NCBI GenBank assembly: GCA_002269645.1
Contig: NIVC01000033.1
Location: 361,335 to 425,334, forward strand
DNA length: 64,000 nucleotides
Reading direction: 5' to 3'
Origin: Macrostomum lignano
Lineage: Eukaryota
Shown here: positions 30,001 to 36,000 of the stretch, piece after piece
How positions within the stretch are numbered: position 1 is the first letter of the stretch
How the letters are laid out: every line of letters begins with the position of its first letter
Position numbers and translations under genes: made by a program
Notes under the pieces: generated by a model
What the model saw: the letters and a program-made list of their open reading frames with translations, nothing else
Database searches by the model: none
What the model was told of the DNA's origin: nothing

Positions 30001-33000
30001 GATAAGCATAAATATTGTTGCTGCCATTGCTGCATCGTTCGCTTCCGAGCGCCTCTGACGGGCACCTTGACGGCTTGCAGCTTCCCGAGGATGCAACCGC
30101 ATCGTGACGTCAGTAGCAGCAGCCACTGCAACTGCCCAAGCAGCAGTAGCAGCAGCCGCGGCAGCAGCTCTAGCAGCAACTGCTTCAGCTAAAGTGCAGT
30201 TTAGCCAGTCAATCCTTTCTTTATTAAAGCCAAGCGCTTAGCCAGACCCGTAGAATCTTTAGTCCTGTTACTGCCATGACTGTGCACCAGCGCCGAAATG
30301 ATCTTGTCAGAATGGCCACGCTGACGGTGGACGGAGGCGAGTCCCTCGACGACAGCGCAGGCAGAGGCGGCCCCGGCGGTGTCAGCATCGGCGGTGGGGG
30401 CGCTGGCGGTGACTCTAAGAACGCCTCGCTGCGTAACATCGCACGCCGGACGCTGAACATGGGCCTGCCTGGGCTCGGCAACACGCCCACCCGCTCGCTG
30501 TGCATCTTCTCCGAGGAGAACATCATCCGGAAGTACGCCAAGATCATCATCGAGTGGGGATATCCTTTTATCGAAGCTGCTGTTTCTAGGAGCGGGGCTT
30601 ATTTGAGGCTGTTTTGGCGCCCATTGGAGACCAAGTGACGTCATAGGGCGTCATGCGTGTTATTTGATGGGCTGGCAGAAACCCAAAGGACTCCCTGGAA
30701 CCCTGGACATATTCTCATGGTGCATTACTCTTTAGCAGCTATCAGGGTATCTCTTAGACAGACAGTGTGTGAAGCCAAGCCTTAACTGTGCGTTTGATTT
30801 TTGCTTTTTTTCCTTAACCAAATCAAATCAAAATGCGTCGCTCGCCTGCACGCCATTCGAGTACATGGTGCTGCTGACTATCATTGCGAATTGCGTGGTG
30901 CTCGGCGCTGAAGAGCACCTGCCCAGGGGCGATAAAACTCCACTGTCCACCAAGCTGGTGAGTAGTAATCGTTTTTAGGGACGTTGCTATGCCATAGAGT
31001 ATCCGGTACTGTAGAGTGATGCGTTATCAAACTCATGTCTTTTAAGGGGCTGCTATCAGTCTCACCATTCACGTTGATAGATGCACAGATAAACAGCCAT
31101 CAGGTTATGGTGCCTTCCTGTCCTTTTCTAGGCAGACTTTCAGCAGTTTTAAATGAGAAAAATGTCCTTTAGTGGGCGATCAGATAATCCTTATCCTTGA
31201 TCAGCACACTGATCCGTCTGGGAATGAGGCAGGATTTCAATTTTCACCCCATCGACATTTCCCCAGCTAGACGGCCGCTTTTCTGTAGAATAACAAAATA
31301 AATATCTGATTATGGGTAACTCAGTCGCGCTCCCTCGCCATCAACCCAAAGGACATGACGGAGCGCTACTTCCTGGGCATCTTCTGCGTGGAAGCCCTCT
31401 TAAAAATTGTCGCTCTGGGCTTCGTGCTCCACAAAGGCGCCTACCTGCGCAACATCTGGAACATCATGGACTTCGTTGTCGTCGTCACGGGGTAAGACGG
31501 ACGAAATTTAAATGAAAAAATATAAATGCATTTCGTTGCTGAAGATTGTGCGCGAGTGTGTCTGAGTTAATATTAAAGTTCAATAGCTCGTATATAGCGC
31601 TATTTCAACTCACGTGGGGAAATATTTTCACGTAAACTGATTGATCATATTTCAGGTATGACTCAGTGGCAGGCTTATACGTTAACTAGTCACCTTTAGT
31701 GCAGATTTTTTACCTTATTTTTCAGGATTCAGAATTATTTTTCTCGCTAAAATTTACGATCTAGTAGGAACGCTATCAAAAGTGCATTCATGATTACATT
31801 CGTACGACGCTCAAAGCATCCGGGAAACGAGGTAAACCGGTACCCAACTTGCATGACGTCGAAGAACTTTTTGGCACATAAGTTTAGAAGCCACCTCTTA
31901 CTGCATGAACACATCCCTTACTGCCAGTAAGATGATTGTCTCTGATTCAAAATGATTGCTTTTTGTCGGATTAACTTTACTCTTATTATATGCACTACTT
32001 GAATCTGCACTGTTATTTTCTCTGCTTTGCTTTTACTTGGGAGCGCAACTCCTTTAGGTAATTTTCCCATTACGAGTAAACATCGAGTGGGGTCACAGAG
32101 GGCTTCTAGCTGCTTCCTGTCAGTAAATAGCAGAGCATACCGCATAGGTTAATACAACAGACGGATTTCTCTGCACTCAGCTTACTTAAACTAAGCCCAA
32201 CCCCCATCGACGAAGCATGAGCATGAGTAATGCAGAGCACAGCAATGACACGCATGCGCCAACAACTCACGGAGTTAGAGTTGCCTATCCGCCAGCAAGC
32301 CCGCATTCAGAAATTCCGGGCCCGCTTTTTTAGAAGAAAATCAACCCGTAGAGAGAGTTATACTCGCCAGAATTTTTATTAAGTGCCCGCAAGCTCGGAC
32401 CGATTCAACCCGCTGCCTTACCGCACAGCAAATTCACCGTAGATCGGTGGCACCCAGCAGCTTTCACTGAATTTTAGGCTGCTAAAGAATGCACCCGGTC
32501 CAAGCCTCATGCTGTCCGCTGTCACTTTCCGCTTGTTGCAGGCTGTTAGCGTTTATCCTGCCAACCTTTGACCAGCCGGCACTGAGGGCGCTGAGAGTGC
32601 TGAGGCCCCTCAAGCTGGTTACAGGGTTTGAGAGTAAGTCTACCCGTCAGTACTGAGACGTTTGTTAAATTAGTTTCAATGGCCAACCGTCCGCTTTGCT
32701 GAGCACTTTAGTTTAAAGCAAAGCCATGCAGAGCTCACTCAGCCAGTCAGACACCCGAACCCAAATCACTTTGCCATTCACAACTTGAGTGTGCTGAGAG
32801 ACCCCTCACTTGTGTGCTACGGCACCTCAGCTAGTAATTTCCAAACTTAAGGTTTGTTTACCTCGTTTGGATGCCTACATAAACTCCGAAAGTCTTGTAA
32901 GCATCCCCTACAGTGCTCAGGCTGACAACTTAGGCTATAGAGAAAAGGCCATCATCAGAGAAGTCAGTGTCTTTTATCAAGCTTTCCTGAACCTGCACAA

Positions 33001-36000
33001 ATTCAGTGCGATAGACCTTTCGTGTCTTGTTTATAGACCAACCACTGTGGCTCCAAGTCGTTTTGCCTGTAGTTTGCTTGTATTGTCAAGAGCCTAATTA
33101 CATTCTTGTCAAACTGTCAAACTTCTTTTACTAGCATTAGACGCTGCCAAATATTCGGAAGCCGAGTCTTTCGAGTCTCTCAATAATAGTTTTGCGGCAG
33201 AACGATTGATTTTGCTCCATTAGCCACTTCCTGTCTCGTTTGTTTCAACAGAAAGAGATTAGCGAATAATTTTGTCCATTTTGTGTTTGTCTCTACTCAC
33301 TTCTGCTCGGAGGTGCCGATTGAAGTTCTGCTTGGCAACTTAGCCAGCGTCGGCAGCTGCGTTGCTTCTTTTTGCGGCGACTGCCAAACTTCTGGCGTGC
33401 AGCAATATTATCCGCATATTATTAATACCCTACCCGATTACTGTGTTGTCCATCTGCTGTCAAAGTACTGTTAAATGTGCACACACGTCGCTTTTTCTAT
33501 CTACATAAAAAAGTTTTCTGTGAAGTGAAGTGAAATTACACGCGTTTTTTATTGCATTTTTTCGGTCTAAAGCAATGGAAGTTGAAAAAATTAGATTAGA
33601 TTAAGGGGGCGTGCCTGTGCTGCGGATGACCAGTGTGTTTGAACTGCATTAACTCGCCTACCAAGCTGCTTTGCTTACACATTATTGCCTACCGGCAGCC
33701 ACATCACGTTAATTGTGCCGTTACGTACCGACAATTAAAATGATTATCATCTGTTTGACTGCGACTGATTATCTTGCAGATTTGTCACACTGTTCGCGTC
33801 CAATCAGAGCAACTTTGATTTGCGAACCCTGCGCGCGGTTCGGGTGCTGAGACCGCTGAAGCTGGTGTCCGGCATCCCCAGTACGGTTTGAGTCCGGCTC
33901 TGGCCCGGCGCCTCTCTCTCTCTACACGTGCTTTTTTGTATAGCAATATTTTCATTATTATTTTACTCTTGCAGCCTCTGCTGCTGACAAGCATGAATTC
34001 TTGGTGAAAAGAAGCACAGCCTCTCTCTCCCTCCTATTTTCTTGTATCTTTTTTCTGGCCATAAAATTCTAGAAAAATTCCGCCGACCACCTGAGCTCAC
34101 AGCCGCTGCCCCACCTGAGCTCACGCTGTGCGCCTTTGCCCAGCTTCTCCTGCTCAGCCTTGCCCGACACCCCTGTTTGCCTTCGATCTTCTGCCTGCCT
34201 ACCAATCGTTCAAATCTTATTTCCAGCGCTCAGTCGCCCACATAGATTTTAGCGCATAAATATTCAATTTCGTTTACGCGCCAGCGACACAAACAGTGGG
34301 GAGGGGGTTCCAAAATTTTGAGTCCAATGGACGGCCCCAGTGATTAAGTTTGTTCTCTATTCTCTAATTACTTCTGCTTGGCTTACGCTAATCTCCTTTC
34401 TATCGCAAGTGAGCACTTAAATCACAGCCGGTAGTCAGAGCAATTTTCCTCAGAATCTTTATATTTGTTATATTATGCTCGACGCAAATTCTCCAGTTAG
34501 AAATCCGGTCAGAAAGCACTTTGATATCTAGCGGCGACTCTCGAGATAACTTATCCAACAAGTAGCTTTCTCGGTTCTTGATTAATTAATTATTAATTAA
34601 CAAATAGCACCTCTTTATTTAATTGGATTTACGATTTAGCTCTACATGTACGCCAAGGCGCCGATCAGTGAATTGTCTTCTAAACAACTCAATCCCTTTC
34701 GACTTAAAAAAAATTCTGATTTGAAAAGAGCTTTTATGCTTATTAAAATTGAAGCTCAGTGTACCGGATTCATTGAGTATGATATTATTGACTAAAATGT
34801 CAGTCAAAAGGGCCAATAAAGATGGCGGGATCAGATAGGCTGTAGATAAATATAGCGTTTTCCAAGCCAATTAATTGAGCACAGGAGCAAGCAATTCAAA
34901 ACTCAGCGGGAGAGTCAAGCGACTTGCTTTACGTTGTCTATGGCCCAAAGAGGGGGTGTCTGTGGACCGACTGTCCCAATTGGCTGCCCCACAGGCCCCT
35001 CTTCTGGGCCATAGACAATGAAAGGGCAGTCTTCAATGGCTTGATTCTCACACTACGGATTAAAACGCAGATTCTTTATTACCTAGATTGGCCACTCCAG
35101 CCGCCTGCCGAGGTTAAGAGCATAGACCATAGCTTCTGCCGCTCCCAAGTATTAGCAGCAGCAGCCAGTGTCTGTGCCCCTAACCTCGGAGACAGCTGCT
35201 AAATGCACTAGCGAATGCTGAAGTGACACGTCTGGGTAACATGGAATCCGTGGATTAAATGACTTGCTGGGATAACGCTATACTTGAGGACTCCTGTTCG
35301 AGAGGTTTCCTTCGTCCCGATCTGCGCGCTCACTTTTTTGCAGTAGAAATTCAAATTAACTCGGCACTGTTTGGCGTTCACGATGAGTTCTGTAAACTTT
35401 TGTATGCAACCGCATGATTGGGAAGTAGAAAGACTGTGGACATGAATTGTTTATCTTGCTAGTTGTTGCATGGATGTTTCATTGTGCAAACCGCACTAGG
35501 CGATGTGGTTGCTGAAGCGGTGCTCAACAAGATTCTGCTTTTAGTGCATGGATTTCTAGTAAGCAAGAAAGATCGCCTTTCTGTTTTCTTAGTTTTCATT
35601 TCCTCAGCTACGTAAGGTAATCATTGTTTGTGTACTAATGTACAGCCCTCGCAGCAAAGGTATTTGAGTTAATAGTGCATGTGGATTAAAAGGATATGGT
35701 CTAGTTATCAGTAAGCTAATTGATTACGTAATACGCTAAAATTCTGTTTTTGAAGCTCAATGTGATGTCCGCATCGTTAGCAAATGAAAACAGCAGCACC
35801 AATGCCTCACTGCCAACCGCAGGCCTGCAGGTGGTGCTGAAGTCAATCATCAGGGCCATGGCCCCCTTGCTGCAGATTGCCGTGCTGGTGCTCTTCGCCA
35901 TTCTGATTTTTGCCATCATCGGGCTGGAATTTTTCAGCGGCATCTTTCACAAGACTTGCTTTAAGAATGGTAGGCCAACATTCGTTCGTATTGCTGTAAA

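What the first reader, a model, noticed from the sequence alone, without database searches (positions are those of the whole stretch)
32542..33880. IS4 exon pair differing in gating charge number
Seen: exon [23 protein letters not shown] has five basic S4 positions. Exon [23 protein letters not shown] replaces the outermost Arg with Pro, has a shorter S3-S4 loop and a different S4-S5 entry. Lengths of 92 and 101 nt (both 2 mod 3) make skipping or double inclusion frameshifting. Inference: shifted activation voltage, paralleling Drosophila IS4A/B, either by ancient homology or convergence.
Basis: partly seen in the sequence, partly recalled or inferred. Interest (0 to 1): 0.7.

Follow-up and report, generated by a model that had tools for sequence, protein, structure and literature searches.

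The report
Alternative voltage-sensor exons in flatworm Cav2
A flatworm calcium-channel gene carries two interchangeable copies of the exon for its first voltage sensor, one lacking the outermost gating charge; the same pair occurs in an annelid, a limpet and a feather star, so it is a real, old, but not unprecedented way to make two channel types from one gene.

Summary
Exon A (32542-32633, 92 nt) and exon B (33780-33880, 101 nt) are homologous exons with canonical AG/GT splice sites. Both fit between the same two flanking exons of a Cav2-type calcium-channel gene from a macrostomid flatworm. Either exon alone keeps the reading frame; including both or neither creates a premature stop. Exon B encodes the canonical IS4 with five basic positions. 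Exon A has Pro at R1, three fewer residues, and TGFES in place of SGIPS.

Exon A is not a decaying copy. Against Macrostomum lignano, only the exons align, and exon A differs at 18 synonymous but only 2 non-synonymous codons. The same A-then-B tandem, with A always 92 nt, occurs in an annelid and a limpet. A crinoid gene has annotated isoforms with A or with B. Parasitic flatworms have one paralog with only A and another with only B.

The arthropod IS4A/B pair sits at the same site but carries different changes and does not group with the A type. The pair here is therefore probably a separate and older exon lineage. A shift in gating is plausible, by analogy with the CaV2.1 R192Q mutation, but is untested. 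This is a new member of a known kind and of moderate interest.

The parts
31352..31491 (+). Constitutive upstream exon (140 nt) encoding IS2 to the first half of IS3 (..[20 protein letters not shown]). It ends with 2 nt of a Gly codon.
   Evidence: Searches give the sequence, the donor GG|gtaaga and the frame. It is 84% nt identical to the M. lignano exon and 87-93% aa identical to the limpet and annelid exons.
32542..32633 (+). Exon A, the non-canonical IS4 exon (92 nt): [31 protein letters not shown]1 is replaced by Pro, leaving four basic S4 positions. The S3-S4 link is short, and GFES replaces GIPS at the S4/S4-S5 elbow.
   Evidence: sequence. (in frame when used alone). (18 synonymous and 2 non-synonymous codon differences from M. 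lignano). (92-nt orthologous exons in an annelid, a limpet and a tapeworm). (HMM hits, including a crinoid isoform).
32634..33779 (+). Intron between exon A and exon B (1146 nt).
   Evidence: GT...AG ends. It does not align with the M. lignano intron. It has no Rfam match and no tandem repeat. At 1146 nt it is too long for steric exclusion between adjacent splice sites.
33780..33880 (+). Exon B, the canonical IS4 exon (101 nt): [33 protein letters not shown]. It has five basic S4 positions (R1-R4, K5).
   Evidence: The S4 core is identical to human CaV2.2 (alignment). It differs from M. lignano at 16 synonymous and 1 non-synonymous codons. This is the exon used in the M. lignano gene model P0241.
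35823..35969 (+). Constitutive downstream exon (147 nt) encoding the S4-S5 linker and IS5 ((S)[25 protein letters not shown]). Its first two bases complete the Ser codon begun by either exon A or exon B.
   Evidence: It is 85% nt identical to M. lignano.

Best explanation
Exons A and B are tandem-duplicated, mutually exclusive alternative exons of a Cav2 (N/P/Q/R-like, 'type A') calcium-channel alpha-1 gene in a macrostomid flatworm. Each encodes the end of IS3, the S3-S4 link, the IS4 voltage-sensor helix and the first residues of the S4-S5 linker.

Shown:
- Either exon alone gives an open reading frame. Both together, or neither, gives a premature stop. Only single-inclusion mRNAs can make a channel, and the others would be expected to be removed by nonsense-mediated decay.
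- Exon B gives the canonical five-charge IS4.
- Exon A gives an IS4 that lacks the outermost charge (Pro at R1). It has a link three residues shorter and an acidic residue in place of the conserved Pro at the S4/S4-S5 elbow.
- Both exons are under purifying selection.
- The pair, with A always 92 nt and always upstream, is shared with an annelid and a mollusc. By isoform annotation it is also shared with a crinoid.
- Parasitic flatworms have split the two versions into separate genes.

Inferred:
- The two isoforms are made in different cells or cell compartments.
- They differ in voltage-sensor behaviour. The most likely difference is a change in the midpoint and/or steepness of activation and inactivation contributed by voltage sensor I, possibly together with a difference in targeting, as in Drosophila.
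- The choice between the exons is set by splicing regulators that were not identified here.
For: Anatomy and frame.

Gene identity:
- Domain I scores 669, 663 and 632 bits against human CaV2.2, 2.1 and 2.3. It scores 470-490 bits against CaV1 and about 300 against CaV3.
- Pfam Ion_trans matches both isoforms.
- The best database relative is the Macrostomum lignano protein P0241.

Purifying selection: across 4.9 kb, only the four exons align with the M. lignano locus. Exon A differs at 18 synonymous and 2 non-synonymous codons of 31. Exon B differs at 16 and 1 of 34.

Conserved tandem arrangement and lengths:
- Dimorphilus: A 92 nt, B 104 nt.
- Patella: A1 92 nt, A2 92 nt, B 107 nt.
- M. lignano: A 92 nt, B 101 nt.
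- All have AG/GT sites and all lengths are 2 mod 3.

Each version is sufficient on its own:
- The Schistocephalus paralog has only A. The Taenia and Opisthorchis paralogs have only B.
- With the IS4 exon removed from the alignment, these paralogs form one clade (95% bootstrap) with Macrostomum outside it. This fits a duplication followed by reciprocal exon loss.

A profile of the A-type exon found about 31 representatives at 50 bits or more, all of them A type. They include Aplysia, the orthonectid Intoshia and the crinoid Antedon. In Antedon, isoform X5 carries A and 14 other isoforms listed in the same protein cluster carry B.

Functional analogy:
- R192Q neutralises R1 of IS4 in human CaV2.1. 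It shifts activation and inactivation to more negative voltages in HEK cells but not in oocytes.
- IS4 charges set the slope of activation in CaV1.2.
- In Drosophila the IS4 exon choice changes activation voltage and active-zone localisation.
Against: - I had no transcript data for the window species. Use of exon A, and strict mutual exclusivity, are inferred from sequence and from gene models in other species. The RefSeq XP_ isoforms are predictions whose supporting evidence I could not inspect.
- The M. lignano gene model uses exon B only.
- I found no conserved intronic RNA pairing or other regulatory element that would explain the exon choice.
- For the analogous SCN exon 5a/5b pair, nonsense-mediated decay was reported not to be the main cause of exclusivity. 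The frame rule is therefore probably a safety net rather than the selector.
- The direction and size of any gating change cannot be derived from sequence, and the R192Q effects themselves depend on the expression system.
- The M. lignano locus might be a paralog rather than the ortholog of the window gene. The selection argument holds either way.
Confidence: 0.8

Rival explanations
1. Exon A is a dead or decaying duplicate (a pseudo-exon) that is never spliced into a productive mRNA. The gene makes only the canonical exon B form.
For: The only gene model available for the closest relative (M. lignano P0241) uses exon B. I had no transcript data for the window species.
Against: - Exon A has an intact frame and a strong donor (GA|gtaagt).
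- It differs from M. lignano at 18 synonymous but only 2 non-synonymous codons, while the introns have diverged beyond alignment.
- The same 92-nt exon is kept in an annelid, a limpet (two copies) and a crinoid isoform.
- It is the sole IS4 exon of one Cav2 paralog in tapeworms and flukes.
Confidence: 0.03
2. The pair is the direct ortholog of the Drosophila and arthropod IS4A/IS4B pair. On this view a single duplication in a protostome or bilaterian ancestor was followed by strong divergence of the A exon in arthropods.
For: - Both pairs affect the same exon of the same gene.
- In both, the non-canonical copy lies upstream.
- The A type seems to predate the protostome-deuterostome split, so arthropod ancestors probably had it.
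- Mollusc and M. lignano A exons and arthropod IS4A share Ser after R2 (..RS[LF]RV..).
Against: - Arthropod IS4A keeps R1 and keeps xIPS, with Gly changed to Arg.
- It is the same length as arthropod IS4B (34 aa) rather than 31 aa, and it shares the arthropod-specific VDLR with IS4B.
- It has none of the A-type hallmarks (the [DN]Q[PAG] motif, G-x-[EQ]-S, the 92-nt length).
- The bipartition joining A-type exons and arthropod IS4A appears in 3% and 0% of NJ bootstraps. The A-type clade has 88% support, or 59% with the crinoid included, and the arthropod-A clade has 77%.
- Trees built on about 31-46 columns are weak, so this rival is disfavoured rather than excluded.
Confidence: 0.25
3. The exons are genuine alternatives, but what differs between the isoforms is mainly something other than activation voltage. 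Candidates are trafficking or synaptic targeting, inactivation, interaction with alpha2-delta, or sensitivity to ligands that bind the S3-S4 loop.
For: - In Drosophila only IS4B channels reach active zones.
- IS4 charges strongly affect CaV1.2 inactivation (abstract of PMC5629230).
- R192Q leaves activation unchanged in oocytes.
- Exon A also changes the S3 end, the loop length and the S4-S5 elbow, not just R1.
Against: No evidence argues directly against this. It overlaps with the best explanation, which already allows targeting differences. Loss of R1 is the one change shared by every A-type exon (P, A, G or S at that position), which points to the charge itself as the selected feature.
Confidence: 0.3
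4. The apparent duplication is an assembly artefact, such as a collapsed or expanded repeat or two haplotypes placed in tandem.
For: The window is rich in minisatellites and transposons.
Against: - The two exons are only 63% identical in nucleotides and differ in length.
- The sequence between them is unique and has no tandem repeat.
- The same arrangement is found in four independent assemblies from three phyla.
Confidence: 0.01

Closest known systems
Drosophila cacophony (Cav2) mutually exclusive exons IS4A/IS4B (exons 5/6); Bell et al. 2025, eLife (PMC11828482); PMC12370356
   Same: It is the same gene family and the same exon (end of IS3 to the start of the S4-S5 linker). Both are two tandem homologous exons with the non-canonical copy upstream and the canonical DLRTLRA[VI][14 protein letters not shown] copy downstream. 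In flies the choice changes activation voltage and active-zone localisation.
   Different: Fly and arthropod IS4A keeps R1 and has one more positive charge (SRIPS). It is the same length as IS4B. Exon A here loses R1, is shorter than B and has GFES. The two non-canonical exon types do not group together. The arthropod type was seen only in arthropods, from insects to sea spiders. The A type was seen in flatworms, annelids, molluscs, an orthonectid and a crinoid.
Vertebrate sodium-channel SCN-alpha exons 5a/5b (5N/5A), mutually exclusive, domain I S3-S4 (PMC12772994)
   Same: These are tandem-duplicated, mutually exclusive exons for the domain I S3-S4 voltage-sensor region of a four-domain channel. 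The duplication is ancient within the family, and the frame makes double inclusion unproductive.
   Different: It is a different channel family. The isoforms differ by one or a few residues in the loop, not by loss of a gating charge. Conserved intronic RNA pairing and Rbfox2 sites control the choice there, and I found no conserved equivalent here.
Human CACNA1A (CaV2.1) familial hemiplegic migraine mutation R192Q
   Same: It neutralises exactly the residue that exon A lacks, the outermost Arg (R1) of IS4 in a Cav2 channel. It is reported to shift activation and inactivation to more negative voltages in HEK cells.
   Different: It is a single pathogenic substitution (Arg to Gln) in an otherwise canonical exon, and its effects depend on the expression system. 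Exon A is a naturally selected alternative that also changes the loop length and the S4-S5 elbow.
Alternative exon 12 of invertebrate CaV3 T-type channels (domain II L5 loop), e.g. Lymnaea LCaV3 (PMC7382465)
   Same: It is an alternative exon in a calcium-channel gene that is conserved across non-cnidarian invertebrates and absent from vertebrates, and that changes channel biophysics (abstract).
   Different: It affects a pore loop and ion selectivity, not a voltage sensor, and it is in a different subfamily.

Membership tests
Cav2 (N/P/Q/R-type, 'type A') voltage-gated calcium channel alpha-1 subunit gene | Sequence is closer to Cav2 than to Cav1 or Cav3. | tested here: met
   Domain I scores 669, 663 and 632 bits against human CaV2.2, 2.1 and 2.3. 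It scores 470-490 bits against CaV1.x and about 300 against CaV3.x. Database hits named type A or N-type are 57-72% identical. Hits named type D, L-type or muscle calcium channel are 44-53% identical.
Cav2 (N/P/Q/R-type, 'type A') voltage-gated calcium channel alpha-1 subunit gene | Four homologous six-segment domains with a Glu in each pore loop (EEEE) and a beta-subunit binding AID motif in the I-II linker. | tested here: inconclusive
   Domains I-III and the start of IV lie on the + strand between 30.2 and 63.0 kb, with pore motifs TMEGW, T[GS]EDW and TGEGW. The AID-like sequence [15 protein letters not shown] is present. The domain IV pore and the C-terminus lie beyond the window.
Mutually exclusive, tandem-duplicated exons | Adjacent homologous exons with the same splice phase that are interchangeable between the same flanking exons. 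| tested here: met
   16 of 23 residues are identical over the S4 core. Both exons have AG/GT sites and both are in phase with the flanking exons.
Mutually exclusive, tandem-duplicated exons | Joint inclusion or joint skipping is unproductive. | tested here: met
   The lengths are 92 and 101 nt, both 2 mod 3. A plus B gives a stop in exon B, and skipping both gives a frameshift and a stop. The same rule holds in five other species.
Mutually exclusive, tandem-duplicated exons | Transcripts contain one exon or the other, never both. | not testable with these tools
   No RNA data were available for this species. Indirect support: Antedon isoform X5 has A and 14 other isoforms listed in the same protein cluster have B. 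Gene models in Patella, Dimorphilus, Aplysia and Mactra use A spliced correctly to LQVVLKS.
Arthropod/Drosophila cacophony IS4A-IS4B exon pair (orthology) | Same exon position, with the non-canonical exon upstream. | tested here: met
   In the fused models of Nymphon, Meganyctiphanes and the flea, A comes before B.
Arthropod/Drosophila cacophony IS4A-IS4B exon pair (orthology) | The non-canonical exon has the arthropod IS4A signature ([19 protein letters not shown][ITL]P): R1 kept, one extra positive charge. | tested here: not met
   Exon A reads [23 protein letters not shown]1 is lost and there is no extra Arg.
Arthropod/Drosophila cacophony IS4A-IS4B exon pair (orthology) | The non-canonical exons group together in a tree. 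| tested here: not met
   The bipartition appears in 3% and 0% of NJ bootstraps. The alignment is short, so the test is weak.
R1-less 'A-type' IS4 exon of Cav2 (a family defined here) | A 92-nt exon, upstream of the canonical exon, with [DN][QEV][PAGS] in place of DLR, four basic S4 positions, and G-x-[EQ]-S in place of G-[IV]-P-S. | tested here: met
   The window exon fits every feature. It is 87% identical to the tapeworm exon, 74% to the annelid exon, 58-65% to mollusc exons and 71% (22/31) to the crinoid exon. In the profile search, the hits at 50 bits or more are all A type; below that the hits are mostly canonical, with a few weaker or partial A-type matches, including the crinoid at 44.9 bits.

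The most novel reading that the evidence does not exclude
The R1-less exon and the canonical exon form a mutually exclusive pair that already existed in the Cav2 gene of the last common ancestor of protostomes and deuterostomes.

- The pair survives in flatworms (Macrostomum), annelids, molluscs, orthonectids and crinoids.
- It was lost in vertebrates, nematodes, rotifers and bryozoans.
- In arthropods it was replaced by an independent duplication at the same site.
- In parasitic flatworms it was resolved into two genes by reciprocal exon loss after gene duplication.

If so, a low-charge and a full-charge version of voltage sensor I would be an ancestral two-channel system of bilaterian neurons, and exon A would be a naturally selected counterpart of the human migraine mutation R192Q.
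Probability: 0.5. Interest if true: 0.65.

Novelty: new member of a known kind. Interest (0 to 1): 0.5.

Why it matters
Most invertebrates have a single Cav2 gene for fast transmitter release. How they diversify it is an open question, and it was recently addressed in Drosophila through the IS4A/IS4B exons (PMC11828482).

This locus shows that a different and more drastic IS4 alternative, one that lacks the outermost gating charge, is widespread outside arthropods and is probably older than the fly pair. It offers three things:
- A natural test of what R1 of voltage sensor I does in a Cav2 channel. R1 is the residue mutated in familial hemiplegic migraine.
- A clean example of alternative exons turning into separate genes, in parasitic flatworms.
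- A tractable laboratory animal in which to test the idea, since Macrostomum lignano can be grown and genetically manipulated.

I found no description of this exon pair in the open literature I could search. It is, however, implicit in several automatic gene annotations.

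Tried and rejected
- **RNA-structure control of the exon choice.** Inverted-repeat scans of the introns in the window and in M. lignano found only short, chance-level pairs, and none was shared. blastn with 7-nt words found no conserved intronic block.
- **Rbfox-type GCAUG motifs.** There are 10 in the window introns against about 3.3 expected. M. lignano has 2 against about 2.7 expected. The only shared feature is one GCAUG 111-145 nt downstream of exon B. This is too weak to build on.
- **Steric or U2/U12 incompatibility.** Rejected. The A-B intron is 1146 nt and all sites are GT-AG.
- **A structured RNA or another gene on either strand of the region.** There are no Rfam matches in the whole window and no tandem repeats between 31 and 36 kb.
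- **A third IS4 exon in the window.** None was found.
- **Genomic DNA of the crinoid gene.** The gene spans about 123 kb, so no DNA was returned. The A-then-B order in Antedon is therefore unverified.
- **Naming the many A-type fragments from metagenome and Logan contigs.** Most have no names, so they add nothing on taxonomy.
- **Literature.** The Aplysia CaV2 study lists only an IVS2 mutually exclusive pair, not IS4. No paper in the searchable library describes a non-arthropod IS4 pair.
- **Structure prediction.** I did not run it, because a static model cannot show a gating shift.

Full report
**1. What is in the sequence**

The region holds two short exons on the + strand.

- Exon A is 32542-32633 (92 nt). 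It is preceded by a pyrimidine-rich tract and cag, and followed by gtaagt. It encodes [30 protein letters not shown].
- Exon B is 33780-33880 (101 nt). It is preceded by tatcttgcag and followed by gtacgg. It encodes [33 protein letters not shown].
- The exon before them is 31352-31491 (140 nt). It ends with the first two bases of a Gly codon, and the first base of either A or B completes that codon.
- The exon after them is 35823-35969 (147 nt). It begins with the two bases that complete a Ser codon opened by the last base of either A or B.
- Spliced with A alone or with B alone, the reading frame runs through. With both, a stop appears 23 codons into exon B. With neither, the frame shifts to a stop near the end of the next exon.
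- Exon B has basic residues at five positions spaced by three (R, R, R, R, K). Exon A has Pro at the first of these, is three residues shorter ahead of S4, and ends TGFES instead of SGIPS.
- The two exons share 16 of 23 residues over the S4 core but only 44 of 70 nucleotides, so the duplication is old.
- There is no third copy in the window.

**2. What gene and what organism**

The same strand carries the rest of a four-domain channel gene, from the N-terminus (about 30.2 kb) to IVS1 (about 63 kb).

- Domain I scores 669, 663 and 632 bits against human CaV2.2, CaV2.1 and CaV2.3. It scores 470-490 bits against CaV1 channels and about 300 against CaV3.
- Both isoforms match Pfam Ion_trans.
- The closest database protein by a clear margin is a Macrostomum lignano Cav2 model, P0241 (1699 bits; the next hit scores 1469). 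Most exons are 75-98% identical in amino acids, and the duplicated and weakly conserved exons are about 55-70% identical.

The window therefore comes from a macrostomid flatworm that is close to, but not the same sequence as, that assembly. I cannot tell whether the M. lignano locus is the ortholog in another species or an old paralog.

**3. Is exon A a live exon?**

The M. lignano locus (L006) has the same layout: upstream exon, A ([31 protein letters not shown], 92 nt), B (101 nt), downstream exon.

- Across 4.9 kb of the window, only these four exons align with L006. The introns are unrecognisable.
- Within exon A, 20 of 31 codons differ, 18 of them synonymously.
- Within exon B, 17 of 34 codons differ, 16 of them synonymously.

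Exon A is therefore under protein-level constraint about as strong as the canonical exon. That rules out a decaying copy.

**4. How widespread is it?**

Predicted Cav2 proteins with an exon-A-like IS4 turned up in several groups:

- Tapeworms, flukes and a monogenean.
- The annelid Dimorphilus.
- The molluscs Littorina, Patella, Mactra and Bulinus.

I fetched genomic loci to see the arrangement.

- Dimorphilus has A (92 nt) followed by B (104 nt) between the same flanking exons.
- Patella has two A-type exons (92 nt each) followed by B (107 nt).
- All have AG/GT sites and all lengths are 2 mod 3.
- A bryozoan (Bugula) and a rotifer (Brachionus) have only B.

Parasitic flatworms differ. One Cav2 paralog has only A (Schistocephalus). 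Another has only B (Taenia, Opisthorchis), with no trace of the missing exon. A tree of domain I built with the IS4 exon removed puts the A-only and B-only paralogs together (95% bootstrap) and places Macrostomum outside them. The simplest reading is a gene duplication within flatworms followed by reciprocal loss of one alternative exon in each copy. This also shows that a channel with only the R1-less sensor is viable.

A profile of the A-type exon was searched against 1.84 billion representative proteins. It gave about 31 hits at 50 bits or more, all A type. Scores then fall to a mix of weaker A-type matches and canonical IS4. Named hits add three more taxa:

- Aplysia.
- The orthonectid Intoshia.
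- A deuterostome, the crinoid Antedon.

In Antedon, isoform X5 (XP_071948425.1) has [31 protein letters not shown]. The 14 other isoforms listed in the same protein cluster have a canonical-type exon. The crinoid A exon is 31 residues long. It shares 22 of 31 residues with the window's exon A but only 16 of 31 with its own B exon. It nests among the A-type exons in a neighbour-joining tree (clade bootstrap 59%), whereas pairing it with Antedon B has 1% support. I could not retrieve the crinoid DNA. The Antedon isoforms are annotation models, and I could not see their read support.

**5. Relation to the Drosophila pair**

The fly IS4A/IS4B exons are at the same place, also with the non-canonical exon first. 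Choosing between them changes activation voltage and active-zone localisation. The arthropod non-canonical exon differs from exon A in several ways.

- It reads ..[20 protein letters not shown][ITL]P.. and is conserved from insects to ticks and sea spiders.
- It keeps R1 and gains an Arg at the S4-S5 elbow.
- It is the same length as the arthropod canonical exon and shares its arthropod-specific VDLR.
- It has none of the A-type hallmarks.
- In trees the A-type exons form a clade (88%), the arthropod IS4A exons form another (77%), and the two together appear in 3% and 0% of replicates.

These alignments are very short, so common descent is disfavoured rather than excluded. My estimate is about 25% for shared origin and about 65% for an independent duplication in arthropods.

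The charge asymmetry is also reversed. In flies the non-canonical exon is the more charged one. Here it is the less charged one.

**6. How it most likely works**

Shown: two interchangeable exons, a frame rule that makes any other combination unproductive, and selection on both.

Inferred: a regulated choice yields two channels that differ in voltage sensor I.

The one change common to every A-type exon is the loss of R1 (P, A, G or S at that position). It is always accompanied by E or Q in place of the otherwise invariant Pro of G-[IV]-P-S at the start of the S4-S5 linker. Three published results bear on this.

- Neutralising this same Arg in human CaV2.1 (R192Q) shifts activation and inactivation negatively in HEK cells but not in oocytes.
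- IS4 charges set the steepness of CaV1.2 activation and strongly affect its inactivation.
- In Drosophila the IS4 exon choice changes activation voltage and localisation.

A change in the voltage range or steepness of gating is therefore the most likely consequence, possibly with a targeting difference as in flies. Its direction and size cannot be read from sequence.

What selects the exon is unknown. I found no conserved RNA pairing or motif. For the analogous sodium-channel pair, nonsense-mediated decay is not the main cause of exclusivity.

**7. Novelty and verdict**

Mutually exclusive voltage-sensor exons are a well-known device, including at this very site in Drosophila. The window's pair is therefore a new member of a known kind.

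What seems not to have been described, in the open literature I could search, is this particular exon lineage. It is R1-less, always 92 nt, shared by spiralians and a crinoid, and split into separate genes in parasitic flatworms. It is implicit in several automatic annotations.

Limits of this work:
- No transcript evidence for this species.
- Short alignments for the exon trees.
- One deuterostome, represented only by annotation models.
- Clustering of the protein library, which means that absence of hits in a group is not evidence of absence.

Noticed in passing
window 39081-39193, 39820-39932, 40999-41111 (+): There are three tandem homologous exons for IIS3-IIS4, each 113 nt (2 mod 3): [50 protein letters not shown] and [25 protein letters not shown]. 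The first has a GC donor (AG|gcaagt). The first two have counterparts in M. lignano (L006 13260-13373 and 14053-14169). The third does not. Dimorphilus also has two IIS4 copies (L001 about 14951-15013 and 15670-15723).
   Followed up: partly
window 42305-42428 and 43107-43224 (+): There are two tandem homologous exons for the domain II pore loop and S6 (124 and 118 nt, both 1 mod 3). One reads ILTSEDWN (Ser next to the selectivity-filter Glu) and the other reads the canonical ILTGEDWN. Both are conserved in M. lignano (L006 17271-17390 and 17786-17902), and the M. lignano gene model uses the TSEDWN copy.
   Followed up: partly
window 60417-60569 and 60814-60957 (+): There are two homologous exons for the domain III pore loop (153 and 144 nt, both 0 mod 3, so the frame rule would not prevent joint inclusion). 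Only the second has a counterpart in M. lignano, so the first may be lineage-specific or a pseudo-exon.
   Followed up: partly
window about 49.6-53.9 kb (+): A Ty3/gypsy-type LTR retrotransposon sits inside an intron of the channel gene, in the II-III linker region. It has one long open frame (49820-53722) with RT, RNase H and integrase domains. It is flanked by a 213-nt direct repeat that is 100% identical (49606-49818 and 53718-53930), which suggests a recent insertion. The generic ORF listing showed its translation before I had recognised it. After that I handled it by coordinates only and neither printed nor saved its DNA.
   Followed up: partly
window 347-7182 (+): A GC-rich stretch carries ORFs with reverse transcriptase/RNase H and tyrosine-recombinase ('phage integrase') domains, twice over. 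This looks like one or two DIRS-like retroelements upstream of the channel gene.
   Followed up: partly
window 18.9-20.3, 43.7-44.4, 45.8-48.4, 48.7-49.6, 61.2-62.0 and 63.1-63.7 kb: There are long minisatellite arrays. The largest (about 45.8-48.4 kb) is very T-rich on the + strand (AT skew -0.97). They fill several introns of the gene.
   Followed up: no
L003, L007, L008 (parasitic flatworm loci): Tapeworm and fluke Cav2 paralogs carry either only the A-type or only the B-type IS4 exon. With that exon excluded, the paralogs form a clade (95% bootstrap) with Macrostomum outside. This looks like alternative exons becoming separate genes through reciprocal loss.
   Followed up: yes
Antedon isoforms P0484-P0497: The crinoid's canonical-type IS4 exon reads [23 protein letters not shown], with Asn at the R1 position. 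In this species, then, neither alternative has an Arg at R1. The exon also has a 12-residue longer S3-S4 link.
   Followed up: no
window 32215, 32221, 32252 and 33991; L006 8676 and 8997: GCAUG (Rbfox-type) motifs are about three times over-represented in the window introns around the pair (10 against 3.3 expected) but not in M. lignano. Both species have one such motif 111-145 nt downstream of exon B.
   Followed up: partly
L001 18817-18894 and 19210-19290 (Dimorphilus): The annelid gene has two tandem copies of the IIIS2-S3 exon (..[25 protein letters not shown].. and ..[26 protein letters not shown]..). The window has only one copy of this exon (about 54679-54789).
   Followed up: no
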